A DNA stretch of 64,000 bases, from NCBI GenBank assembly GCA_976226885.1, contig OZ320316.1:77066001-77130000 (forward strand), read 5' to 3'. This DNA is from Iphione sp. A-MEVVRFRX5 (taxonomy: Eukaryota). Below the pieces are notes generated by a model. It was not told the origin of the DNA. It saw only the letters and a program-made list of their open reading frames with translations, and made no database searches. Positions 3,419 through 63,146 of the stretch are shown in pieces. Numbering within the stretch: the stretch's first letter is position 1; every line of letters starts with the position of its first letter. A program made the translations under genes and the position numbers.

Positions 3419-6400
3419 GCCTGAACCTCAGGCGCGCCTGGCCACTGTCGTCATTGGGGGCTGTCGGGACTCTATGGACCAGTCACCTGGGATTAGTGGC
3501 CATTGGTCAACACGCTGTGTCGTGAGTGACTGAAAGCCCGCCTGTGAGATGCCCATCTCCATTGGAGGGCCAGTTTATCCCCAACAAACATCCCGGGCGA
3601 CAACACATTGGGCGGCTCTTCAAATTGCTTTGTGTGGACAGAAAGTATTGTGGCCGCAACACTGGCTGCGACCGTTCATCCGGAACACAGGGTTAAGCTC
3701 GTCCTTCTATAGATTCGAGGCCGTATGAATCACCTCATGCCCGATGTTCGCAGACGGGGAAAACGCCGGAGATTTCACACCTGTCCGTAGATTACAGATA
3801 CCAAGCGTCGGTGGGTCTAAATTTTCGCACCGCGTCAAAGCCGCTAACGTGAATCTGGTTAGTTTAGGCCAATCACCGCACAACCGGCGTCGGACCGATC
3901 CAAGAGCAATTTGCACCTAATTCGGCACTTCGATCGCTATTACGCTTCCACCATTGCGTAAATCTACTGATAACTGCCCAATTTGTCCCCATGCTCCTTG
4001 TCCACTCATGATATATGAGTTTGGTGGCTCTCCACTTGACGGCACAAAGGTTGAGGCAAATTGACACACCAGCTCGGGATCCATCGACTTTCTCTCCAAC
4101 AGGGATCATCCCTCTTAGTTCTCTCGGCTTTAGAGCCCTGCCCAGATAAGGTCAGGTCGAGCAGATTACGGATCCAACCCACACAGCCAAACATTTTTAT
4201 CTTGTGTTGACCTAATCTTTCCGGTGAGCTCTGCTTCGCACCGTTCGCTCTGAACATTACGTGTGCACCGGCGATCTAATTGGGTTCTGATTGTGAGCTT
4301 CGGTTAAGTAGCCGCATGTACCAAACGGCATGGTTTACTGGCTTCTTTTATTAGCGTACTTGCGAAACTCATCTGACGATAACAAAATGCTGATTCTGTA
4401 TACGCATCCTAGCCGCGTCATCGTACCCTGTGATAAAGCACTAATGTGGAAAAATGCTGTGAACTACATTGTACTTGTAATTTATATCCTGTCCACCATA
4501 TGCTGAACTCGAAAAAACCTCGCCTGCCTTCTTTCTGTCGTCAACTACATACTGCACGTTTATCTATCTCCTCACCCATTCTGACATGGAGATCCACACA
4601 CTCTGTCTGTCTGTCTACATGTCTGCCCATCTGCCAGAGGTTGCAATCTCTCCGTGGTTCCGTGTCATACAGTGCATCACCATCTTTAATGATGACACAT
4701 GGTGGGTGGGGAGCGCCATCTTTCTGTATCTAATCTACCCTATTCCTAGCTACCCCACTGCTCGATAAATAACATGACACTCCCCTAAAGGCCAGCGCAT
4801 GCCGATGCCAGCTGGGCATCTCGTGTACTGCCAAGCGACTCTGCTGGGGGACGAGGTCAAAGGGACAGCCTGCATGTACACGGGAAGTAGTACGGAAGGC
4901 ATTCTGTCAAAGGGCATTGGTGATTGAGAGACTTCAGGCTGATAAACGAAAACAGTATCAAGACAAAACTGAGAACGACAGATAAGAGTGAAACCTTTTA
5001 GATCTTTACCGACAAAACCTCCTCCTCGTGGCTAGCTACCCGATAAACACATAGCGATCTAAGGGTGTTACTGAAGGTCAATGCTACTTCTCTCAATCCC
5101 TTCCTATCTTATCATTATATAGGTTATTACGTATATTTTTGGGGTAGGAACGGCGTCCGAGATGTAGATATGGTGCATGAGACGTCTACGGGATGTTTAA
5201 AAATTATTATGCATACTTCTGGCCTTCACAGCAGCGTCATTTGTACTAGGACAGCACTGTAATTACCATATTCGGTTCGTCGCCAATACAGTACACTGGC
5301 CTCAGTGTATGTCTCTAGCTTGAATTATTCCATAGGAAAATGACAAATACAAAAAATCAGTACCACAAAATCATCTGGAGCGATTATAATTTTCATTGAT
5401 GGCATTTGGGACACAGTAGCTCAGTACATCTGTGCCTTTCCAGTTGATGAACAAAGCTTGTATACATCCAACTTCTCATCCTTATTTCTTAACTTTGTAC
5501 TTTGAAGGAAAAATGGAAATTCCTAGCAAAAAAAAGAGGAATCTCTTCATGACCACTGATTTCTTTCATCATGATAGATTATTCAGTCGATTCTGCTTAA
5601 GTGGCTCGACTACGTCAAACCACCGTATCAAAGCGTACTACAGCATCCCCAGTATACATGTTTAACCGTCGAATATCAAATGTTTTATTTGCTCATCTGG
5701 CCTGTAAACAGGTGGGCGTATAGACACTGCGGGAGCATTCATCACATATGACAGCATATATGGTATCCTGGTTTCTGAGCCATATTGCTCGGATGATCTT
5801 AAGTCACATACTGAATTGACCATCATCACTCTCCAGCTCCCTATTGAGATAGACATGCACATATAGTGCAGGTCAATGTATGGATCGCCACACTGTCACT
5901 ACGTAAATGTCTGGAATTACAACAAGCTGATTGGTGTTTTTTCTATTATGATGTCACAATTAGTAAAAGTTACATCTGCGGTACCCATTTATTCAACTGT
6001 CCGCGATCCGTCCAATGAGCGATTGCTCAGAGCCTGCTACATGTACATGTATTAAATGTTCTCGCCAACTAAGCCGAATTCTGCAAATACACCTGCATAG
6101 CTACAATTGAATTAAAAAATGCAACTATTGCTTTCAGCGTAACTGCATTTTTTCCCCACGAAGAATACTTGTCGATATGTACATGCATACACATTGTATT
6201 GTTGTATGGATCTAGACGAGGCAGGATTCTGATAATACCACATGTGGGTCATACCCAGAACCTATATATTTACAACACGGTATTGCTACCTTTGTATAAA
6301 CCCCTATGAGATCAACATTATTGTGCAAACTACATCCGTATTACTACTAAAAGGATTTTAGGCTTACATATCCTGAAACCCATTCTGGTTGCTTATTTAC

Positions 6401-7024: not shown

Positions 7025-8974
7025 TCACTTTATCGTTCACCCGAACAATGGGTCCATTAGAGTAACTTGTCAAACCTATCTCAAGATAATTGTCACTCAA
7101 TGCTAGTCGAGGGGAAACTGGCACTCCAATACAGCGAAATTTGTTCAATGAAGGGCTTAGATACACTTCTCTACGCCAGATTTTAGGTCGCTAACGACCT
7201 TTCTCTGTGGACAGAACCACTCAATGGAAGGCACCGACGTACAACACATTGCGCATTATTTTGGGGGTTATAATTAGCTGTTGGAAACCTGTGCCCGAAC
7301 ATTCTCCCCCGTTGAAAATACGTTTTCAGTTAGAACCGGGCGAAGAGATTGCTGACAATCTAGCGCCATATTCGCCTCCGTCTGAACTGGAACTCTTAAA
7401 GATTGGCCATGTCGAACACTGTCCGTCTCTGTTCGCATATATCTGTCATCTTTCACACCCGGGGCAAGGTTGGGTCTAAAAGGTGCCTATTCATCACCTC
7501 ACCTGTTTGCACGCCCACACAGGCGTGTACATCGACCCTTGGTGGGCTTGATGCTCACTATGCGATTGTCACCTGTGGCTCTCTCACATTCCTGAGAAGG
7601 GGGTGTCGGGGGTGTCTCCCTAGCGAGGGTATTAACGTCAAATCCGCACATCGTCATGACCAAGCACAGATGACGGACTCGCTGTATCGGACTTTCAAAC
7701 TCGGGATCTTGGGCTCATCTTTTCTGATCCTACTGTCCCTCACTGACCCCTAGGAGCCATAGGGGCGCACAAGAAGGGTACAGAATGGACGGGCATCTGC
7801 AGCTTAAAGGTACATGTATTCTGATCGAAGACATTATCTGATGGGTGTGATTACTTTCAAAATGCCTCAAACTAATGACTACTTTAGTTGCACTTGTCCC
7901 AAAAAAAAGTCAACTATGTACCTGTGGGGCCTCTCATACATTCTGGTAGCTTTACAACCCAGTGGAATGGTGGTTGAACATGCTAGTATTTCTTGTTGGG
8001 ATTATTTAGACATTTTATGTGAATGATTTTGACACGGCAATAAAATGCCTCACAGGATCATACACCATAAATGATGATCACAGGAAACATGGTCCGTCTG
8101 AGTAGGTGGCCACAGGCCTTGCGGACTGTCGGTCTACATTCCAACGTCCTAATGCTAGATCCTGTTTCCCAACAATACTACTCGCCGACACTGATGTCAT
8201 TGAGGCGAGTGTATGAAACACCTCCCGTGACTAGGAGAAACGGTATCTCCTTCCTTCGGCGAATGCAACGGGCGTTTGCTGATAAAATTGGGAATCGAAT
8301 TTCTCATTGATTTCGTACAGACAAGTTTTATCTAAGTAAAAATGTCCTAACGTATACATGTATATGCATGTAATAACACTAAAAAAAGGTACATACACAG
8401 AAAGTTTAGGCTGGTATGACTCATCAGTCTATGTCCGTTTCATATGTTTAACTTTTTCTGAAGTAGATTGATTCTAACTTGGTTTTAGATGAGTGAGTTA
8501 TACACGGTTCGACTAGGGGGGGGGCAAACGGTATAACAGTGGGGAACAAACCTGTGTGGGTCTGTAGATAAACTACCTACAAATGTCAATCAAAAACAAT
8601 GCCATAAGCCTTCCAGTGTTGACTCTTAGTCCAATTGAATGTGGGCCTATTGTCGACCATTGGCCCAGGCCCCATGAGGGGATTACAAATGGGGTCCGGC
8701 ACAACTGGAAACGAGTGTGTTGGACAGTAAAAACAAAACGCAACCCTAGACTGTGCGCATGCACCAGCCTGTTTAGAAGGTGTGCCTGCAACAGACATTA
8801 TATCCCTACAAAATGTAAGCTTCAAGATCTACTTTCAAAGCGCAGAAACGTAACATGACGGCGTACTCTTGTAATCAACTTTACGTACACTATGTACACG
8901 TACAACTGTCTAAGTAAATACAGGTAAATATTTGTGTACACGACAAGAGGGACCTTGGCGTAAAGTGATGTTAC

Positions 8975-9079
8975 CCTTTTTTGATAGTACTCCTCTTCCT
9001 TTGGGTCGACCGGCCTGTTTCCGCCGTCACCATTGTCCTTCTTCTTTTTCTTTTTCTTTCTTCCACACCCGCAAAACAT
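8975..9079 (-). CDS. Candidate alternative first coding exon MFCGCGRKKKKKKKDNGDGGNRPVDPKEEEYYQKR (Cys plus polybasic)
   Basis: ccgtcaagATG context, 35 codons ending at AGG|gtaaca (phase 0); upstream acceptor tttcttcccctcatcag at 9161 gives an 81-nt 5' UTR portion. Confidence 0.7.
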
Positions 9080-9362
9080 CTTGACGGCGGAGAATATGTA
9101 TTATTCCTCCCTTGAAATAGCAATCTCCGTCAGTCACAGAACCTCCAACGTCATATCTGGCTGATGAGGGGAAGAAATCCCAAATCCGAAGCGCTGTAAT
9201 CGCAGCCTACATATTCCTGTAGCGGGGCGTCCGCAGCTGTCCGGTGTTACCTAGAAGTATTTCTAGGCACGACCAGTTGAGTAGCGAAGGCTACCATTGG
9301 GCCTTGTCCAAGGCGGTTCAGTTATGTGGAAGGGTGGTGGTGCTCTTCAACCGCCAGTTTAC

Positions 9363-9419: not shown

Positions 9420-10372
9420 CTGAGGATGAAAAAGTTAGAAGAGACTGGCGTAATCGTTCTTGTATGTCTGCATGTGTTGGACTGAATGTGTATTGAGAGT
9501 TAGTGGCAGGATGGCCCCGTCTGGTCTGGAGTCTACTATGAATCACGCTACATAGATAGGTGGCTAGCGCCAAAAGACGAGACTCATGATATTCCAACAA
9601 ACTTGTCGGCGTGACTGAGGGTCGCGTGTAAAGTCCAGCTAGCTTCAATATGCGGTTCACATGAACTTCTTGCCCGCCACGGTCTGATGTTCAATACGGT
9701 TTCACACCGGTCTACAGTGTCTACCAACGTTCAGTGGTCCTCGGCTGGGTGACCGTGGCGTGTGTCCTGGCCAGCGGTGCACGCAGAATAAAGCAATCTG
9801 ACACTGTTCACAGTTGGAGGCCCCACCAGCTTGAAGTTGAAGCCGACCACCACAGAAAGGAAGGCGGGGACCACCGACCGGCTGACCGACTGGCTGGCCT
9901 TCCCGATGAATGGCCTGTTTGCTTACGTTAAGCTTTACCGGCCGCTCCACCCCTCCGGCTGTGCGCTGGTCCGTCAAAATATCACCCCGTGGAGGACGCT
10001 AACTGGGACGGCCCATTCCTCTCCAGTACTCTTTGTGTCGTCTCAGCTTCCGGTCCCGCAAGTCTTCCTCCCCATCGCCCGTCTAATAATCGAAAGGGGT
10101 CGGGGTGCAAGGAACTACCTCCCAGTGATGAGGTGACGGGTGACTGGGTCGCACTTAGGGTTTGTGCCGTGCTAGTTGACCGGCATAGCCTCGCCTGGCC
10201 GAGGTCGTGCTCACTAGTGGCCCCGTTATGATCATGTGTGTAGAGCAGCAGGAAGACACGGCGGCCCGGCTCTCACGCCTCCTCTGTTCGCTCACTACCC
10301 CTACGGCCTACGCACGAACGATGCTGCCGGTGAGCGTCCGACGTTACCCGACTGACCGACCTACCTACCTAC

Positions 10373-10748
10373 CTCTCTACCTGAACCTCCTCCTTCCCCA
10401 GTACCAGAGGGGAGGGGAGGATGAGGAGGATGATCAGCCGGTTCACTACACCTGTTACCTCCCCGCTCGACAAGGGCAGCAAAAGCAAACAACACACAAT
10501 CGTACGTGTCCACGGTGAGTGTTTCGGGTGCAGATCGAAATGGCAGAGTTGTGGCTGGTTGGCAGGGGGTCCTCGGCGGCCAAACTTCCCATCCCCGGCG
10601 GCCCGCCGCCAATGGAGACGCATCTGCGACTGACGAGTCGGTTCTTGAGAGTGTACGCGCTGAGGATGGTTGCTGATGCTGAGGCTGCGGGGGGGGGGGG
10701 GGGGGGCGGCTCGCCAGCAGGTCAGGCGCGGGTAGTTGGATGCTACTA
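10373..10748 (-). CDS. Candidate 376-nt Pro/Ser/Gly-rich exon, phase 2 in, phase 0 out (SSIQLPAPDLLASRPPPPPPQPQHQQ...GEGGGSGRE)
   Basis: Acceptor cctttccctcctatagcttccag, 125 open codons, donor GAG|gtaggt. The frame depends on the length of the G run at 10689-10706. Confidence 0.45.
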
Positions 10749-11016
10749 CTGGAAGCTATAGGAGGGAAAGGTGCACTATGGTTGGGATGAACATCTGCCA
10801 GGCAACTCCTCGCGGCGTGTGTCGGCCTACAGCACGCAGCCTTGTTGGCGGACTCTGTTCACTGGTTTCTGATTAGTTTTGACTGGTTCGTGCGTGCTTT
10901 ATGACCAATTGAACACACCCAGTTTAACTCCATGAAATTAAAAGAAGAATCAGCCTAAGGCGCTGTCTGTTATACTGATGCCTCGGTGCAGGGGTTATAT
11001 ATCCCTAACTTATTAC

Positions 11017-18500: not shown

Positions 18501-19983
18501 GCCTGTGCAGTCCAATAGGATTCCTATGGTCTATGGCTGAATTTTTCAAAGTGCATGTGTTCACAGCAATGGTGCAATGTTTTCAGCATGCCTTTTGGGC
18601 TGTAGTGCTAACAGTGGGATGATTTCCTTAGGCATGTGTTTTCATGGCATTGGAAACATGCCACCACAGCAATGTTTTTAGAGTGGGAACTTTCTCATTT
18701 TTCACAACACCACAGCTGTTTTCACTGTGTTTTGGGTCACATGTCTGTTTTTGTATACAAGTAAATGCCTGAAGCCCTCCTCCATGTAGTGTGTTTGACA
18801 GCCATCATGTGTTTTTAGCGCCACACAGATACAATTGGCTCTGACCAACTCTGATCAAATCTGGCCAGGCAATAAAGGGTCCCAGTAATGTTACTTTGGA
18901 ATCCTGCTGTGAATATTTTAAAAAAGCTCCTAAAACGAAGGCTTTATTATGTCTCTTACAAATTACTTTACATTACTTACTTACATTCCTGCTTGTACAT
19001 TACATTTTCTTACAAAATCTGGTGTCTACAGACCAGAATCCACTACTGAGGAAACTGTGCGAGTGAATTCTTTCCCAGGCATCGCGTCTGATAAGAAGAG
19101 GGGAGTATATTTCCATATTAAAGTTCTGAGATGTAATTATGAAATACATACAAGGTGAGATGTAATTATGCGAGACATAACTGATACATACAAGGCGAGA
19201 TGTAATTGTAAATAATTGTAAGATATTATAACATAAAAGTTGAGATAAAGCTGTATAAGTCAAAAAAACCAATATGGCATCTGGAAAACATCTGATGAAA
19301 ACATCCTGTATGCTAATTGTGACCCCCTATCAGCCATATAAGGGAAAACATGGTCGTGTTTCCATGGTGCACATGATAAACACAACGGTGGAAACACAGC
19401 CAAAGGACGAGGTAATCCCCTGAAGGGGAAAAAACAGATGTGGAAACACATGGCAAGAAAAAACGCACCCCTAAGGTAATTCAGACTACATAAAGATTTC
19501 TTCTTTTTTATATCAAAATCATTTCAAATAACATATAAACAACCCAGTACGAAGTACCCATGTAGTGTAATAATACATATATTTAATAAAAATTCAGCTC
19601 ATTAGACAACCATTTTACCATTATAGGAAACATGAAATTGTGACGAAAGATTGAACAGCAGCATTCCTAGGTCCCCAACCTCTCTGAGGCTGAGGAGGCA
19701 GGGGACAAAAAAAACTTTATCTTAAAATAGCAATGTTCCGTCGATCCCTGGAAATAACTGTGCACAATTGAGCAGCGTCAGCTGTTACCACTGGAAATGA
19801 TGTAACTGAACTGGAGAACGTAAGGCTGGTGTACCATCCGAGTAGGCCATAACAAAAACCCATGTATCCCCACCAGTACACCATGTACATGTATGTACGC
19901 ACATGAGAACCTATGAGGATACTTGCCAGGTTTTCCTGTTTAATTCTACATGATGTACCTAAGATAATCTCCGCTGTACTTAC

Positions 19984-30134: not shown

Positions 30135-30227
30135 CTGGAAGTGGAGAATGATGGTCCATATGAGGCCAAGGGTAAGCTTCGGGTTTCCGTCCACAATCTC
30201 ATCTGGCCGAATATTCACCAACCGAAT
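30135..30227 (-). CDS. MACF1/DST/PLEC-like: CH1 exon equivalent to plectin exon 5: [31 protein letters not shown]
   Basis: Acceptor tttatcacattag, 93 nt, donor gttagc; ends in phase 0, so the next (CH2) exon must start in phase 0. Confidence 0.97.
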
Positions 30228-32060: not shown

Positions 32061-32288
32061 CTATAAATCGGAAGGAAAATCATATTTTAGAACGATTCTC
32101 ATAAACAGTGTGCACGTTAAAACTTTTGTGATGATGATTATTTTCATTCATAATAAAAATGCATAATAAAATAGAAATGCTTCTCAACAAATTCTATTTC
32201 CTAGGGTTGGATCGGGTCTGAGCATTCATCCAACAGATGACAGAATATGGCTTCCTGCCAAGTAATACTTATTTAATAATGCACTCAC

Positions 32289-32378
32289 CATGGAATCCTG
32301 GGAGAGAACCTCAAGCAGCGTAATGAGGTTATGACCATCACGTAAATCTTCGAAGAGGTCAGTGACATGGCGGTGGAC
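32289..32378 (-). CDS. MACF1/DST/PLEC-like: CH1 exon equivalent to plectin exon 3: [30 protein letters not shown]
   Basis: Acceptor ctttaaatag, 90 nt, phase 0/0, donor gtgagt; contains [20 protein letters not shown]. Missed by the ORF track because it is short. Confidence 0.97.
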
Positions 32379-44700: not shown

Positions 44701-46294
44701 TTTTCTGAACTATGCAGCGAAGGGTGGATGGGTACGTATTAGTTGGCATTCATCTGGAAAATAGATAGGAACTTGATGCAAGGAAAAGCACTCCCTCTTG
44801 AGGTATGGAAATATGCACATGTTCCTCTAACGTCGTGCATGCACCGACTGGATTCTTCAATGTACTCATTTAACAAATGCTAGTCATCTACCCATGTACA
44901 CATAAATGCCTTTCAGATTCAATAGATCGTAGTTTACGGTCACACTTCCCCCTGCAGTTGCATCTGATGGTCCCTGGGCACTGTCCACAAGCTCCGTGGA
45001 CAAAGCTAGAACGTTTTATAACATACCCCGCCCGCCCTTATATTTAACCTGGCAATGGTTCGAAAGTTAAAAAATTGTTGAAACAATGCATGCGTTTTTA
45101 AGACCTTCCCATTTCATTCTTTGACTTCTGACATTCTGGTACAAGCAAAATGGCATCAGTCGGAACAACAAGCTGGAGCCTGTATAGGCTTCTATCCTAT
45201 TCTATTTGCGTAAAATTAATACCATGACAAAACGTCCTCACTATGTACTGGAATCTGCCATTTCTGTGGTTATCTGATGTTGCCTATAAGTTCTCCTTTA
45301 TCACCGGGCTGCCTGCCTGATGACTGGGCAAAATCATTTAGAGGCTATCAGTACTTTCCGTTGTTTGTTAACAGACACTGCTGTTTGTCACCGAGTCAAC
45401 TTCCTCTGACCAGATGACGGCAGACTGTCAATAACCAAAGCAGTGAGCCTTCAGCCCACTCAGTACTCCAGGGACCATTGACTCTGCGACATTGTGGACT
45501 CTGTCACCTTGCAGTCCTTGGGCAACAGGTCGCCATGATGAGCCGCCGGCCTGCGGCCTGTTTGATCTCCACTCACTGCCAAGTTAACTCAATGTTTGCG
45601 GCAGCCAGAATGCAGCTTTCCCGAAGGTAATTTCGTTCTCAAAGTAAATGTCCCTTAAGGTAATGTGGGTTTGTATTGGTTTTCATTCACGGTTATACGG
45701 AGATTTCATTCCAGGCCAGATACTTAAAAATATAGTCAGAACTCAACAGACCGAAAAAAAAAAGCATGGCTGATGCAAAAATCGTGGGTATTTTGCATTT
45801 AGCTAGTTTAATAGTTTGAATACAAAACAGCAGGGCATTGGTCATAATAAGGACCTACGAGGTCTAGTGTCCCCCGCTAGCTGTTCAATTTAGTAGAACT
45901 CATTTTTCTGCTTAGGTGAGTACACAATTGCATGGGCTTAGCTCTATATCCTCTCATGTACGTGTGTACACACATATTTTCTCTTTTTTATATTAAAAAT
46001 GCTTTGAAAAACACAAAATTAGCCAGTACCAAGTACAATGTACCTACATACACGAAAATAATATAAAAGAATCGGCACATTTGCCTTGAGAGTAATATAA
46101 TAAAGTTAAAAGATCCACATTATCATGACGGACAGTCTGATAGCAGTATTCCGAGGTCACCCCTCTTTGGACGCGGGGGACAATACAAAGTTGGAATTTT
46201 GTCTTTGTTGGACCATAGAATGTCATTTCACTTAAGTCTACCTGTACATGCATGTACACCTCTCTGGTGACAGAAAGAAACGCAATGCACAGAA

Positions 46295-46435
46295 NNNNNN
46301 NNNNNNNNNNNNNNNNNNNNNNNNNNNNNNNNNNNNNNNNNNNNNNNNNNNNNNNNNNNNNNNNNNNNNNNNNNNNNNNNNNNNNNNNNNNNNNNNNNNN
46401 NNNNNNNNNNNNNNNNNNNNNNNNNNNNNNNNNNN
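46295..46435. other. Assembly gap (N run)
   Basis: 141 consecutive N. Confidence 1.
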
Positions 46436-48437
46436 AGATGTAATCATTCTAGAAGAGCTGCTAACTGGACTTAAGTTTCACAAACACTGTTTTAAGTACA
46501 TGTATATGACACAAATCCACGGTATTCATTACTAGTTTAACTACACCCGTTTTGTTACCATCGCACTTCTTATCAAGTGACGCAGATACCTTACTATGTT
46601 CTTGTTAGGTTCTCGTGTCCAGATATATATTGCCCTACAGAATAAAGGTGACTTGACATGATACTGCGTATGTTGTGTTAACCATCCAGTCTTCAGACTT
46701 CATATACAAGTCTCATACTTTCGAGGACATCCTTCTTACTAGAGCTAGTTACATCACCTACCTTAACCAAACCAACAGTGACTCATTGGATACATACCTG
46801 TGAAAAAAGAAAAACAATCCGTAAGTGAACATACCAAAAATGTAACGATTCATAATTGTTAACCTTTTCCTGTGGATGTGAAATGCAAACGCGAAAAGTG
46901 TTAGTACAATGGAATGAGTAGTACAACAAAACACAAAGGGTCCAACAAAGCATCATAACATATTAATTCTTGTCGACTTTCTGAAATCATTGTCCGTTGC
47001 AACAGAATTGCTACACGCGTCAAGGAGCATGTACACAAGCAGGTACATTAGTTAGGCCTTTCTCTTTCTGTTGTCACCCGAAACACTGTGACCTTTAGCT
47101 CCAACTACATATACTGAATCAGATATGGAGCAAAGAAGAAACAAGATTATGGATGAAATGGACGAAGCAATGAGAAACATGGCTGGCTGGGTGCCAGATC
47201 GTCCGCTGATCTGCACCAAATAGCATTTTCATTCCCCACCCTTTTATCTGCTTGCTTCGTATACATGTACATTTATTACTGTCGAGCCACCAGGGGTAAG
47301 AATGCGTCGTCTAATCAAATATGCGGGCGAAACATGTAGCTAATATCGTGCAATAGCACGAGGAGGATGTGTGTTAAACAATTCAGAGCACATTACAGTC
47401 GGCGGAACAAAGCCAACAGGATGATATCACTTTTTGATGATTATTTCTAGAATGTGGGCAGGCACTTACTAAAAAAGGGTCTTATTTTTGCTTGCACCAG
47501 AAAGACCCACATATACATGTATTTTATGATCTCGCCTCAATCACTTCCTCTGTATTATATAGCATGCAGGCAATGAATGCAGCTAACAACATGCTGTCTG
47601 GATGTTTCAGTTTGCTTACAATACATCTAGCCATATGACTCCAGCATACTCGTATATATATATGTGTGTATGAACGGAGCTTTCTCAATGATTAAACCGA
47701 TATATGATGCAATGAAACCACATATGGTTTAAAATAGCTGGATTGACATGTCATTATAATGACAGCAATATACAGTCGAGAATGTCTTACTCTAAGAATA
47801 TACAGCGATTCCCAATCTGGAAAGTTTATTCTCAAAGTCATCAATGACCTATTCCTAATAAGAACAAATCATGTAAATTTCTGTGAAATGTTAAGGGCAT
47901 GTATGAATAATTTTGTTTACGTTCCTCCAGTGCTGCTATTTCTGGAGACCTCCAGAAAAAATAACATTCGCTATTGCAAGTTTGGCAATCAAAAACTTTA
48001 GTACTGAAACAAATATTATAATTACATGTATATCATTGTTATCAACCCCAACTAGCTTAGGAATTATACCAACAGGACGTAATAAAGGAAGGTGTTCAGG
48101 TGTTCTTCTCGTTTCTTTCTTTTTCAAAAAAGAAACGATATAAAAGCACAAAGCTAATAAAAAGCCATATCTATAGAAAAATCTAAACGTATAAGCTAGG
48201 CGTTGTTATACATAACAAAACATGGTGGGCTGGAAAAACAGGGTCATGAAAACAAATACGCAAGAATATGAAAATGGGAGGTTCTTGGCATCCTGGAGAG
48301 TTTGGCTGAGGCATGGCATCCGTTCTTGGGAGCGGTGCCTAATGGAATCTTGGGATGAAACAGGGGAATCAGGGATTAGCGAGTCAGTATGATCAACGTC
48401 ACACAATGGCGTTGTCATGTGGTCATGCCCGGTGTAC

Positions 48438-59600: not shown

Positions 59601-61920
59601 AGCCAAGGAGAAAATATTGACTGAGATGTTGGCATTGTGAAGGTTAGGTGCTCTTGCGTTTGTCTATAAAGCTGCCTCTATAGATGTAGGAGGTATGGCT
59701 TCACCATATATGGAATGTTAATGACTTGCTAATTAGAGGAAGATCTACTTCGGTGGGCACCAGAAATAAAGACAAGCTTAAAGATAATTAATTCCCATAA
59801 TTATCCCGAAAGGAAGAAATAGATTAGCTGCGTTCAGCGTATACAAGTCTTACGCTCCATACTTACTAGCAAGAGGAAGCTATACTCATACTGTAACTGT
59901 AACGGTGGTTCTTGTCTCTACATCTACGATTTTTCTCTTGGTGCAGATATCTGTGAAATGATACCATATTTGCCTGCGGAAAAACCTTGATTCTTTAACT
60001 AAAATAGTAATTACATCAACAGTACCCATAATATTCCCATGCTGTCTGAATAAACCCGCTTGGAGGGTTTTCTGAAAACGGTGGCTGAACACAGTTATTT
60101 ATGATTCTTACTTGGTATCAATGATTCGACATTGGTTTGTACTAAGATAAAATTGTAAGTATATAAAGATGGATACAAATATAAGATATGTGCGGTACAT
60201 AAAAGCAGATGTGTCTTGTCCCTTATCAAAGAGGTCAGGCTATAGTGGGATGCTGGATGTGTTGGGGGGGGGGCGACAATCAGTCGTTTTATGAAAAGCA
60301 ACATTCTTTAGCGACACCCAACACTACTGGTGGGTGCTTAGCAATACAAATACGTGTGGTTTGCTGGCCCCCTTCCCTTTGTACCCTCTTAGTACATCGT
60401 TAGACACAAAGACGTCCACATCAACGTATACTTGCTATAAACGTGATGACTTACTCACAGTACCCCCACCAAGGACTCGAATAGCCATCCTTCATAAGGT
60501 ACCTGTACTAAATTTGGCTTATTGAACATAAATCGTCGACAGAACCCTCCCAGCACTGTGACAACGCCCCCCCCCCACCTAAGCGAGGGTTTCGTGCAAA
60601 CAGGTAAGTCCTAAGTAGGAGTCCAAGTGTTTTCCTTCGGATCCTTTGTATTGCAATCCCACAAAGTGAGTAATCCCGAGTACTCCTAACACCAGGGGAG
60701 ATAGCTTTGGCTAATGTTCTGACCAGGAGGGATGTAACTTTGGATGATATGGACGCTTGGTGAACGTGGGAGTATAGGGAAAACGTGGTGTATGTATAGG
60801 GGTATGGACCCCCAGTGTGAAAAGGACCATTGCAATAATGGCAGGCGGTCACTTCCCACCAAGGGTGACGACAATGCTGAACTGGGTAGCCTTAACTTTA
60901 GGCGGTTCAATAGATTGGTAAACCTTTTCATGGACTTCTTTGGCACAGAAGCGGAGATTTTAAACAAACACTTGGGATCGGTATGGGTCATGGGGTATCT
61001 TGGACAGGCTGTATTTATACCTGACATTTCTCTATACAAGTATTTCTAAATTTCCCCTTTTAAACTCTCTACGAAGTGTAAATTTTGGTGGAGTGTACCG
61101 GCACACAATTGTGGATAGCTAAAAAAAAACCTGCATTCAAGAGAAGTACTAAGCTCTTCGTGAAAGGTCTCCTTTAGAATGTTGTTGGTCTACGTATGTA
61201 AGGACATTTCAGCGTTGCCAGGTTTATCTCTGACAAAAGAAATAGCCCTCGTGATAAATATTTAAGGATAAATTTGCACGATACAAAAAAGGAAAATTCA
61301 GGGAATGTACGAAACAGTCACTGATAACGTCTGTAGTCGTTGAAAACTGATAACTTCAGGACCACAGGTGAAGGCGACAAGTGATCTCAAACGCAATATG
61401 ACACTACACTGGAAAGTGTCGTGGACAAATGACCAAATCCCATGTTCAACAACAATTGTCTTTAATTAAAGAGTTAAATATATTCACGATCTGTTCCCGC
61501 TTTCGGTCCAGTACGTAGACCTTCTTTAGGCGATGGGAAACGTTGGTATAAGATTTACAGTGGAAAACGTGTGGCACTGCTTAGAGTACAGTCCCTTCCT
61601 GTCAACCACTTCCTTTCAAGACACAACAGGCGAAGGCAATGTCGTTTCTGGATACGTATGGCATCAATAAACAAATAGCAGGATTTGACAATAGTCAATA
61701 GACATGCTAACCAGAGATTCAACAACCGGAAAACCACATTAATCATATGGGAATAGCAGCACCAAGCCATTTTCACTATAAATGTGTACTGTTTAACCGG
61801 ACATCATTATCTATTTCCAGAGTGCATTTTCAAATTTTAGAGATCATAATAGAATTAATGTTGCTTTCACCGTATGGCTTGAACTCAAGGGATAAAGGTG
61901 AGTCGACATGAAAGAGAATC

Positions 61921-62083
61921 NNNNNNNNNNNNNNNNNNNNNNNNNNNNNNNNNNNNNNNNNNNNNNNNNNNNNNNNNNNNNNNNNNNNNNNNNNNNNNNN
62001 NNNNNNNNNNNNNNNNNNNNNNNNNNNNNNNNNNNNNNNNNNNNNNNNNNNNNNNNNNNNNNNNNNNNNNNNNNNNNNNNNNN
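61921..62083. other. Assembly gap (N run)
   Basis: 163 consecutive N, adjacent to a minisatellite and probably a collapsed array. Confidence 1.
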
Positions 62084-62086
62084 GTT

Positions 62087-62239
62087 GAGTTTTGTGTGCT
62101 GATTGGAAGGAATTCCACCCGAATCTGTGTAAATGTCAAGTTTTTTGCACTGATCAGAAGGAATTCTGCCCAAATCTGTGTAAATGTTAAGTTTTTTGTG
62201 GTGATAGGAAGGAATTCTGCTTGAGTTTTCTGTAAATGG
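62087..62239 (+). repeat. 51-bp minisatellite, about 3 visible units, running into an assembly gap
   Basis: Unit about (g/a)agttttt..gtgctgatt.gaaggaatt...cc.aatctgtgtaaatgt, repeated directly after the N run; it explains the pseudo-ORFs 61844-62329 and 61885-62292. Confidence 0.85.
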
Positions 62240-62963
62240 TGAGTTTTTAATGCAAACGATGTGCAAATCACAAAATATTTCACATCTATCATAAATTATG
62301 ATAGTGTCTATCCACCTGAAAACCACCATCTCTCTATCCTACTGGTCATTTGGCTATCTGGAGTCTGGAAAATGTGTAAATTTACGGACATTGCCTGTTT
62401 TCTGACTCCGGACCACGGACCATGAACCATGCACATGGATGCATGGAAACACCCCAGTACATTCCCATAGTACTGTTCTTTTCCGTACCACGCAGTCCAT
62501 GGTCCGGGGAGAGAATCTGTACACAAGGAAACCAGGCCTAACACCAAAGCGATTATCATGGATATGTGGCAAAAAGTGGGCTGCAACCTCCTAACAGCAG
62601 AGACAACACAAGCCATCAGCGTGGAGGGGAGGGATTCTCTTTCATATTGCAGCGACAACATCTATAGATTACATATGCTTTACTATTTTGCATGTTTTCC
62701 CCACTAGGAGATGCATGTGTGCTTGATCTGACAACTGGATTATCCGGTATCTGGATTAATATAGCAGGAACGGAGATCGTCTGGCTGATGAGGCAGGACT
62801 GTACATAACTTTAATGACAACGATACAACCAATCAAATGCAATGCCTCTCAATGTGATATTAACCTACCAACAGTAGGAGAGAATGTGTATGTAAAGGCG
62901 TTGATTCACACGTTTATCATGTTTGTTAGATATGTACCCATAGCCAGAAACGGGAATACTCAC

Positions 62964-63025
62964 CTTTATTAAATGTTTATTGACCCATTTGGTAAAGGTC
63001 TTCTTTTGTACAGAGTCGCGTTCAT
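62964..63025 (-). CDS. MACF1/DST/PLEC-like: CH1 exon equivalent to plectin exon 2: (D)[20 protein letters not shown], phase 1 in, phase 0 out
   Basis: Acceptor ttttttttcag, 62-nt exon, donor gtgagt; peptide nearly identical to plectin [21 protein letters not shown]. Confidence 0.97.
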
Positions 63026-63146
63026 CTGAAAAAAAATACACAAACCTCACAATGACCCATTTAAATTGAGAAAACATGCATATGAAGTGGGAAATTCTGT
63101 TTCGACTTCTTTCTATTATACCACTTCTCTAGTTTATTTCCATAAC

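What the first reader, a model, noticed from the sequence alone, without database searches (positions are those of the whole stretch)
8975..9160. MFCGCGRKKKKKKK N-terminus: Cys pair plus polybasic membrane anchor without a myristoyl glycine
Seen: 35-codon exon with a good start context, an upstream acceptor at 9161 and a phase-0 donor; it encodes CGC followed by R and seven K. Established: N-terminal Cys plus a polybasic run is a typical S-palmitoylation/anionic-lipid plasma-membrane signal, and vertebrate dystonin-3 starts with an MGxxCGC-type acylation motif. Inference: this is the functional, possibly orthologous, counterpart of the dystonin-3/MACF1a3 first exon, using palmitoylation and charge instead of myristoylation.
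Basis: partly seen in the sequence, partly recalled or inferred. Interest (0 to 1): 0.7.

Follow-up and report, generated by a model that had tools for sequence, protein, structure and literature searches.

The report
Conserved lipid-anchor-like start exon of spectraplakin
A 35-codon exon inside a giant cytoskeleton-linker (spectraplakin) gene is a real, strongly conserved alternative protein start whose first residues (MFCGCG plus a lysine run) look like a fatty-acid and charge membrane anchor, though its use in RNA and the lipid attachment have not been observed.

Summary
On the minus strand, ATG 9079 opens 35 codons (MFCGCGRKKKKKKK...) that end at a phase-0 GT donor at 8974.

The ORF and donor alone are not significant: the same 32.6-kb intron holds 208 comparable ATG...|GT frames. 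Conservation is what makes the exon real. The same start, M-[F/L]-C-G-C-G followed by a basic run, occurs in five other invertebrate contigs. In the three contigs long enough to show it, the exon lies 1.2-7.2 kb upstream of the first CH2 exon of the orthologous gene.

- Flanking sequence cannot be aligned.
- Synonymous sites in the first 13 codons are saturated, while replacement change is close to zero.
- All six copies have an in-frame stop upstream and a phase-0 GTA donor that matches the phase-0 CH2 acceptor.

The gene is a true spectraplakin (CH1, CH2, plakin domain, giant plectin-repeat exons, GAR). The exon sits where the vertebrate type-3 (CH2-only) leader starts.

My reading is an alternative first coding exon of a CH2-only isoform, probably anchored to membranes by dual Cys S-acylation plus a polybasic patch (GAP-43/PSD-95 style).

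Not shown here:
- transcription or splicing (no RNA run was listed);
- acylation;
- orthology to the vertebrate exon.

The parts
8975..9079 (-). Coding part of the alternative first coding exon: 35 codons, MFCGCGRKKKKKKKDNGDGGNRPVDPKEEEYYQKR
   Evidence: Sequence. Orthologous copies appear in L025, L026, L027, L028 and L034. In the first 13 codons pN is 0-0.06 and pS is 0.5-1.6.
8969..8974 (-). Splice donor GTAACA, phase 0
   Evidence: All six taxa end the conserved frame at a phase-0 GTA donor: GTAACA, GTATCA, GTAAAT, GTAAAT, GTAACT, GTACAG. This matches the phase-0 acceptor of the CH2 first exon at G000:C10:77063571, 11,403 nt downstream and outside the window.
9080..9160 (-). Possible 5' untranslated part of the exon; the 5' limit is not established. 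It holds an in-frame TAA (9103-9101) and a small uORF (ATG 9154 to TGA 9134).
   Evidence: There is no conservation upstream of the ATG in any pairwise comparison.
9161..9180 (-).
   Evidence: It is not conserved, and AG dinucleotides upstream of the ATG in the relatives stand at varying distances.
30135..30227 (-). Last CH1 exon ([31 protein letters not shown]) with phase-0 donor CAG|GTTAGC. It marks the start of the 32.6-kb intron that holds the exon.
   Evidence: Pfam CH positions 78-108, E 1.1e-4.
32229..32378 (-). Open frame holding a middle CH1 exon (..[20 protein letters not shown]..); exon limits not defined
   Evidence: Pfam CH positions 21-52, E 2.2e-4.
62868..63128 (-). Open frame holding the first common CH1 exon ([21 protein letters not shown]); exon limits not defined
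   Evidence: Motif scan.

Best explanation
This is the alternative first coding exon of a CH2-only ('type 3' or 'C-type') isoform of the animal's spectraplakin (MACF1/dystonin/Shot-family) gene. Transcripts that start in the CH1-CH2 intron would splice its phase-0 donor to the first CH2 exon, giving MFCGCGRKKKKKKK...YYQKR|[12 protein letters not shown]...

The conserved N-terminus, M-[F/L]-C-G-C-G followed by 5-7 basic residues, most likely works as a membrane anchor. The hydrophobic residue 2 and the lysine run would give a first, weak contact with acidic membranes. DHHC palmitoyltransferases would then S-acylate Cys3 and Cys5 and lock the protein on. The result is a giant microtubule-binding linker that lacks the strong actin-binding CH1 and is tied to a membrane instead.

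Shown: the exon, its place in the gene, its conservation and its coding-type selection.
Inferred: transcription, the splice to CH2, the acylation and the membrane targeting.
For: Gene identity:
- CH1 exons lie in the window.
- The CH2 first exon, 11.4 kb downstream, is closest to plectin and MACF1 among solved structures (E 1.6e-18 and 6.4e-15).
- Plectin-repeat giant ORFs score 656 and 531 bits.
- A GAR/GAS2 domain lies on the same strand at C10:76948902-76949573.

Conservation: five other contigs carry the motif.
- P0001/L025: MFCGCGRKKKKKKDGKDDEDNKPVD..
- P0002/L026 and P0003/L027: M[F/L]CGCGRKKKKKKD..PPYAPVD
- L028: MFCGCGRRKKKKK..PVQ
- L034: MFCGCGPRKKKSK..RPV

L028 and L034 were reached independently, through their CH2 exons.

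Synteny: the exon lies 7,248, 3,622 and 1,199 nt upstream of the orthologous CH2 exon in L027, L028 and L034. In each pairwise comparison it and the CH2 exon are the only conserved blocks.

Selection: Cys codons vary TGC/TGT, Gly GGG/GGA/GGT/GGC and Arg AGA/CGA/CGC/CGG/AGG. pN is 0-0.06 against a saturated pS. That is tighter than the CH2 exon (pN 0.14 for window against L027).

Start and splice signals: all six have an upstream in-frame stop, a purine at -3 of the likely start, and a phase-0 GTA donor.

Mechanism by analogy:
- PSD-95 (MDCLCIV; Cys3 and Cys5) and GAP-43 (MLCCMRR) are dually palmitoylated N-termini without myristoylation. Cysteine spacing and downstream basic residues matter in both (PMC2063950).
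- Dystonin-a3 has a putative acylation motif and goes to the plasma membrane (PMC3279385).
Against: - No RNA run was listed for the exon, so neither transcription nor the junction to CH2 has been seen.
- No spliced or annotated protein beginning with this peptide was found among 1.84 billion cluster representatives. Isoforms of one gene are likely collapsed into a single representative there, so this is weak evidence.
- A run of lysines is also a classical nuclear-localisation signal.
- No acylation predictor or experiment was available.
- In L026 and L027 an in-frame ATG two codons upstream (MPM-) would shift the cysteines to positions 5 and 7.
- If the exon really starts at 9160, it carries a uORF.
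Confidence: 0.6

Rival explanations
1. The exon is real and spliced to CH2, but the lysine run acts mainly as a nuclear-localisation signal or as an electrostatic binder of acidic partners (tubulin tails, nucleic acid). The cysteines would then serve another role, such as metal or redox chemistry, and not lipid attachment.
For: R/K runs of 6-8 fit the monopartite NLS pattern (established knowledge). The basic run is conserved in all six taxa. No evidence of acylation was obtainable.
Against: The most invariant residues are not the lysines but M-[F/L]-C-G-C-G at the extreme N-terminus. They are held through many synonymous changes. In L034 the basic run is broken up (PRKKKSKLK) while MFCGCG is intact. 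An NLS does not need N-terminal cysteines. The C-x-C spacing plus downstream basic residues matches proven palmitoylation codes (PMC2063950).
Confidence: 0.17
2. The conserved frame is the start of something other than the spectraplakin: a stand-alone small protein or the first exon of a separate nested gene in this intron.
For: No RNA shows the junction to CH2. Gene callers report it as free-standing ORFs of 69-194 aa.
Against: Beyond the proposed donor the read-through tails are unrelated and of very different lengths: 31, 69, 78, 85, 126 and 194 aa. Conservation stops at a phase-0 GTA donor in all six. The only other conserved block downstream on that strand is the phase-0 CH2 exon, at 1.2-11.4 kb.
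Confidence: 0.07
3. It is a chance ORF across a purine-rich tract in an intron, with no function.
For: The intron holds 208 comparable ATG...|GT frames. AAG/AAA runs are common simple sequence. Pfam and the Atlas find nothing.
Against: Six taxa keep the same start with synonymous-only change while the flanks are unalignable. The chance of MFCGCG within 10 kb upstream of a CH2 exon is about 2e-5 per contig (my estimate from codon counts), yet it was found in both L028 and L034.
Confidence: 0.01

Closest known systems
Vertebrate dystonin-a3/b3 (BPAG1a3) and MACF1a3 type-3 N-terminal leader
   Same: - It is an alternative start inside the actin-binding-domain region, downstream of the CH1 exons, giving a CH2-only protein (PMC7325434; bioRxiv 10.1101/122010).
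- It is a short leader described as a putative myristoylation or palmitoylation motif with plasma-membrane targeting (PMC3279385, PMC3352950).
- Here the exon has the same place in the gene, the same phase logic and an acylation-like N-terminus.
   Different: - There is no Gly2, so N-myristoylation is excluded; a lysine run follows the cysteines.
- Sequence homology to the vertebrate leader was not demonstrable, and the vertebrate motif itself could not be read here.
- The host is an invertebrate, called an annelid by other agents' notes.
PSD-95 (MDCLCIV) and GAP-43 (MLCCMRR) N-terminal dual-palmitoylation codes
   Same: Met, then a hydrophobic or small residue, then two cysteines within the first five residues. 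The spacing is C-x-C as in PSD-95 and the downstream basic residues resemble GAP-43. None has a myristoyl glycine (PMC2063950).
   Different: The basic run is much longer (R plus 5-7 K). The intervening and following residues are glycines. The motif is attached to a giant cytoskeletal linker. Acylation is untested.
K-Ras4B-type lipid plus polybasic membrane anchor (established knowledge)
   Same: A run of about six lysines next to a lipidated cysteine, giving electrostatic and hydrophobic binding to acidic membranes.
   Different: K-Ras4B is C-terminal and farnesylated through a CaaX box. Here the motif is N-terminal, and the lipid would be a thioester-linked acyl chain.
Drosophila Shot C-type (CH2-only) isoforms
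   Same: An invertebrate spectraplakin with an internal promoter that gives a CH2-only N-terminus and its own lead sequence (bioRxiv 10.1101/122010).
   Different: That review states that no function has been reported for the Shot lead sequences. No CGCG/polybasic motif is described there, and I could not compare the sequences.

Membership tests
Spectraplakin gene (MACF1/dystonin/Shot family) | N-terminal CH1+CH2 actin-binding domain of plakin type | tested here: met
   CH1 exons were found in the window. The CH2 exon is closest to plectin and MACF1 among solved structures.
Spectraplakin gene (MACF1/dystonin/Shot family) | Plakin domain, plectin repeats and a C-terminal GAR (GAS2) domain in one gene | tested here: met
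   Plakin-domain-like exons lie downstream. Plectin repeats score 656 and 531 bits in giant ORFs. A GAS2 domain scores 72 bits on the same strand at C10:76948902. That all of these belong to one transcript is inferred from order and strand.
Type-3 / C-type (CH2-only) spectraplakin leader exon | Lies between the last CH1 exon and the first CH2 exon on the same strand, with its own ATG and a donor phase that fits the CH2 exon | tested here: met
   The same layout is seen in L027, L028 and L034.
Type-3 / C-type (CH2-only) spectraplakin leader exon | Transcribed from an internal promoter and spliced to CH2 | not testable with these tools
   The look-up of sequencing runs listed no RNA run, so read laying could not be used.
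Type-3 / C-type (CH2-only) spectraplakin leader exon | Sequence homology to the vertebrate dystonin-3/MACF1-3 leader | tested here: inconclusive
   The profile search of 1.84 billion representatives gave only invertebrate-type ORFs. The vertebrate leader sequence was not obtainable.
N-myristoylated proteins | Gly at position 2 after the initiator Met | tested here: not met
   Residue 2 is Phe or Leu in all six taxa, or Pro if the upstream ATG is used in L026 and L027.
N-terminal dual-cysteine S-acylation signals (GAP-43/PSD-95 type) | Two cysteines within the first ~5-7 residues, a hydrophobic neighbour and downstream basic residues | tested here: met
   M-[F/L]-C-G-C-G-[R/P]-[R/K]n is invariant or near-invariant in six taxa. 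The motif definition is from PMC2063950.
N-terminal dual-cysteine S-acylation signals (GAP-43/PSD-95 type) | Demonstrated thioester acylation and cysteine-dependent membrane binding | not testable with these tools
   This needs acyl-biotin exchange or metabolic labelling and localisation of mutants.

The most novel reading that the evidence does not exclude
A membrane-anchored, CH2-only spectraplakin isoform is an ancient bilaterian invention. On this reading the C-G-C core of this invertebrate leader is homologous to the acylated N-terminus of vertebrate dystonin-3/MACF1-3. Lineages would then have swapped the helper signal (myristate in vertebrates, a lysine run here) while keeping the palmitoylated cysteines.
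Probability: 0.3. Interest if true: 0.6.

Novelty: new variant of a known kind. Interest (0 to 1): 0.5.

Why it matters
Spectraplakins are essential linkers of actin, microtubules and membranes. What their alternative N-terminal leaders do is poorly understood: a review states that no function is known for the Shot leaders, and dystonin-a3 is only 'putatively' acylated.

This exon gives a short, sharply defined and strongly selected motif (MFCGCG plus a basic run) at the head of the CH2-only isoform in several invertebrates. Three things follow:
- It argues that membrane tethering of the CH2-only isoform is a selected, possibly old, function.
- It offers a 14-residue tag that is easy to test.
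- It shows a myristate-free version of the anchor.

Tried and rejected
- **RNA evidence.** The look-up of sequencing runs (kind rna) on the 186-bp exon listed no run, so read laying could not be used. Transcription stays untested.
- **Family scans.** Pfam on the 35-mer gave no family. ESM Atlas by features gave no usable hit.
- **Own-genome searches.** DNA and protein searches found only the exon itself, so it is neither a repeat nor a paralogue.
- **First word search.** The 85-aa read-through ORF gave one hit at E 0.21. That hit became convincing only after the DNA alignment and context checks.
- **Third word search.** The five-sequence profile added nothing new.
- **Vertebrate motif.** Jefferson et al. 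2006 is not held. A text search for a remembered N-terminal string found nothing. I therefore make no claim about the vertebrate sequence.
- **Sample accessions.** A search for the accessions of the related contigs found no paper, so their species are unknown.
- **Relatives without the motif.** No motif was found in the upstream sequence available for L029 (3.9 kb), L030 (4.2 kb), L035 and L036/L037. With flanks this short, that says little about absence.
- **CpG island.** CpG observed/expected around 9-12 kb is no higher than the window average, so no promoter call was made.
- **Bacterial promoter/terminator scan.** Not used, because it does not apply to an animal gene.

Full report
**Observation.** On the minus strand the window reads gtcAAG ATG TTT TGC GGG TGT GGA AGA (AAG/AAA)x7 GAC ... 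CAA AAA AGG|gtaaca.
- The ATG is at 9079-9077 with A at -3.
- The frame has 35 codons, MFCGCGRKKKKKKKDNGDGGNRPVDPKEEEYYQKR, and ends at 8975 before a GT at 8974-8973 in phase 0.
- An in-frame TAA at 9103-9101 closes the frame upstream.
- The acceptor-like tract ending at 9161 exists. If it were used, the exon would also hold a small uORF (ATG 9154 to TGA 9134).
- The stretch is single-copy in the 1.18-Gb genome.

**Gene context.** The host gene runs on the minus strand of G000:C10.
- CH1 exons lie in the window near 63.1 kb ([19 protein letters not shown]), 32.3 kb and 30,227-30,135. The last of these is [31 protein letters not shown] with donor CAG|GTTAGC in phase 0.
- The first CH2 exon ([56 protein letters not shown]) lies at C10:77063571-77063404, about 2.4 kb beyond the window start, behind a phase-0 acceptor.
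- That exon matches plectin and MACF1 actin-binding domains best among solved structures (E 1.6e-18 and 6.4e-15).
- Further downstream on the same strand come plakin-domain-like exons.
- Two giant open frames of 3,957 and 6,570 aa follow. The 2,200-aa and 3,333-aa stretches of them that I scanned are packed with plectin repeats (531 and 656 bits).
- A GAR/GAS2 domain follows at C10:76948902-76949573.

This is a bona fide spectraplakin spanning at least 180 kb. The exon sits in the 32,563-nt intron between CH1 and CH2, 11,403 nt upstream of the CH2 exon.

**Chance.** That intron contains 208 ATG-initiated frames of 30-80 codons that end at a phase-0 GT, five of them with a G|GTRA donor. A purine-rich tract read in one of three frames gives poly-K. 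Taken alone, then, the ORF, the donor and even the lysine run are not evidence of a gene.

**Conservation.** A word search with the read-through ORF gave one weak hit. P0001 is a 69-aa ORF on a 5,957-bp Logan contig and starts MFCGCGRKKKKKKDGKDDEDNKPVDDFYYKKIAQ. DNA alignment and blastn/tblastx show that similarity begins at the ATG, covers the frame and stops near the proposed donor. Nothing else in the contig matches the 184 kb around the window.

A two-sequence profile searched against 1.84 billion representatives added two more:
- P0002: MFCGCGRKKKKKKDGEANTDPPYAPVDR...
- P0003: MLCGCGRKKKKKKDSDSDPPYAPVDR...

The 9.5-kb contig of P0003 (L027) also holds the orthologous CH2 first exon, 85% identical in protein, 7,248 nt downstream on the same strand.

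I then went the other way and searched with the CH2 exon, scanning what lies upstream of it on the contigs found:
- A 101-kb contig (L028) has MFCGCGRRKKKKKAKKYSTPVQ|GTAACT 3,622 nt upstream of its CH2 exon.
- A 3.7-kb contig (L034) has MFCGCGPRKKKSKLKVDNKQKKSKRPV...NAPQ|GTACAG 1,199 nt upstream.

These two were found without using the motif as bait. In every pairwise comparison this exon and the CH2 exon are the only conserved blocks.

**Selection.** Across the six copies the first 13 codons differ almost only synonymously.
- Cys3 is TGC or TGT, and Cys5 is TGT or TGC.
- Gly4 is GGG, GGA or GGT, and Gly6 is GGA or GGC.
- Arg7 is AGA, CGA, CGC, CGG or AGG.
- The lysine codons alternate between AAA and AAG.

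Nei-Gojobori counts give pS 0.5-1.6 (saturated) and pN 0-0.06. That is tighter than the CH2 exon itself (pN 0.14 for window against L027). This pattern rules out a conserved non-coding element.

Invariant residues are M1, C3, G4, C5 and G6. Residue 2 is F or L, and a basic cluster follows. A second small island, [R/K/A/T]-P-V, lies 8-14 residues further on. The rest of the exon varies in sequence and length (22-61 codons).

**Start and splice signals.**
- All six copies have an in-frame stop 5-31 codons upstream.
- All have a purine at -3 of the likely start. L026 and L027 have an extra ATG two codons upstream, which would give MPM-.
- All have a phase-0 GTA donor where conservation ends: GTAACA, GTATCA, GTAAAT, GTAAAT, GTAACT, GTACAG.
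- The four CH2 exons seen all begin at a phase-0 acceptor.

Past the donor the read-through tails are unrelated and end after very different lengths. This argues against a free-standing small protein.

**Mechanism.** The product would be a CH2-only spectraplakin whose N-terminus is M-F-C-G-C-G-R-K7.
- There is no Gly2, so myristoylation is excluded.
- Two cysteines at positions 3 and 5 next to a hydrophobic residue and followed by basic residues is the layout of two proven myristate-free dual-palmitoylation codes: PSD-95 (MDCLCIV) and GAP-43 (MLCCMRR). In both, cysteine spacing and downstream basic residues matter (PMC2063950).
- A lysine run beside a lipidated cysteine is also the K-Ras4B principle (established knowledge).

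The most likely working is therefore electrostatic and hydrophobic sampling of acidic membranes, then S-acylation of Cys3 and Cys5. This would tether to a membrane a linker that has lost its strong actin-binding CH1.

The cysteines and glycines are more strictly kept than the lysines; L034 breaks up the run. That favours acylation over a pure nuclear-localisation reading, but the latter is not excluded.

**Comparison with the known.** Vertebrate dystonin and MACF1 make type-3 isoforms with only CH2 from a promoter downstream of the CH1 region (PMC7325434; bioRxiv 10.1101/122010). The dystonin-a3 leader is described as a putative myristoylation or palmitoylation motif that directs the protein to the plasma membrane (PMC3279385; PMC3352950; PMC6975176). 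The exon here matches that leader in place, phase logic and kind of signal, so 'works like' is well supported.

'Is orthologous to' is not tested. The exon profile found no vertebrate protein.

Notes by other agents of this scan call the genome an annelid. I did not test this. For Drosophila Shot, the review states that no function is known for the leaders.

**Limits.**
- No RNA run was listed, so transcription, the 5' end and the junction to CH2 are inferred.
- Acylation and localisation are inferred.
- The species behind the five related contigs are unknown. From unalignable introns and 77-85% CH2-exon protein identity they are clearly different species, but I cannot say how far apart.
- Public gene models of related animals may already include this start. 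I could not search eukaryotic annotation, and no paper found here describes it.
- Runs of N in the window were left untouched.

**Verdict.** This is a real, selected alternative start exon of a CH2-only spectraplakin isoform with a GAP-43/PSD-95-like acylation motif plus a polybasic patch. It is a new variant of a known kind and of moderate interest. The decisive tests are simple.

Noticed in passing
G000:C10:77012602-77000732 and 77000715-76981006 (minus strand; loci L013, L017, L018, L019), downstream of the window: Two adjacent giant open frames of 3,957 and 6,570 aa in the same gene. The 2,200-aa and 3,333-aa stretches scanned are dense with plectin repeats (Pfam 531 and 656 bits). Together they form a plakin-repeat region of roughly 10,500 residues, far larger than those described for MACF1b or dystonin-b.
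   Followed up: partly
L026:474-482 and L027:1790-1798: In these two related contigs a conserved in-frame ATG-CC[C/G]-ATG precedes the motif. Translation may therefore start MPM[F/L]CGCG, which puts the cysteines at positions 5 and 7. The first ATG has the better -3 purine.
   Followed up: partly
L030:3357-3959 (Logan SRR25867661 contig), about 250 nt upstream of its CH2 exon at 4205: A more distant relative with very short introns has no CGCG motif in 4.2 kb upstream. Instead it has a 201-codon open frame that, from its ATG, reads MFSRFRRRGPP... This may be a different basic leader for its CH2-only form.
   Followed up: no
window 9134-9154, minus strand: A six-codon uORF (ATG ACG TTG GAG GTT CTG TGA) lies in frame with, and 75 nt upstream of, the main ATG. 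It matters only if the exon extends to the proposed acceptor at 9161.
   Followed up: no
window 19789-19890, minus strand: Another ATG-to-donor frame in the same intron has the same G|GTAACA donor and is strongly hydrophobic (MYMVYWWGYMGFCYGLLGWYTSLTFSSSVTSFPV). It lies near another first-reader note about a transmembrane first exon. I saw no match to it in L027 or L028, but their upstream flanks are short.
   Followed up: no
window about 46047-46448 and 61847-62338: Runs of N (304 in the 184 kb examined) interrupt the CH1 part of the gene. They were left as they are.
   Followed up: no
window 9500-11000: A stretch of raised G+C (0.56-0.59, against 0.43 for the window) lies just upstream of the exon. 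Its CpG observed/expected is no higher than the window average. It could hold the isoform's promoter or leader exons, as another first-reader note proposes.
   Followed up: partly
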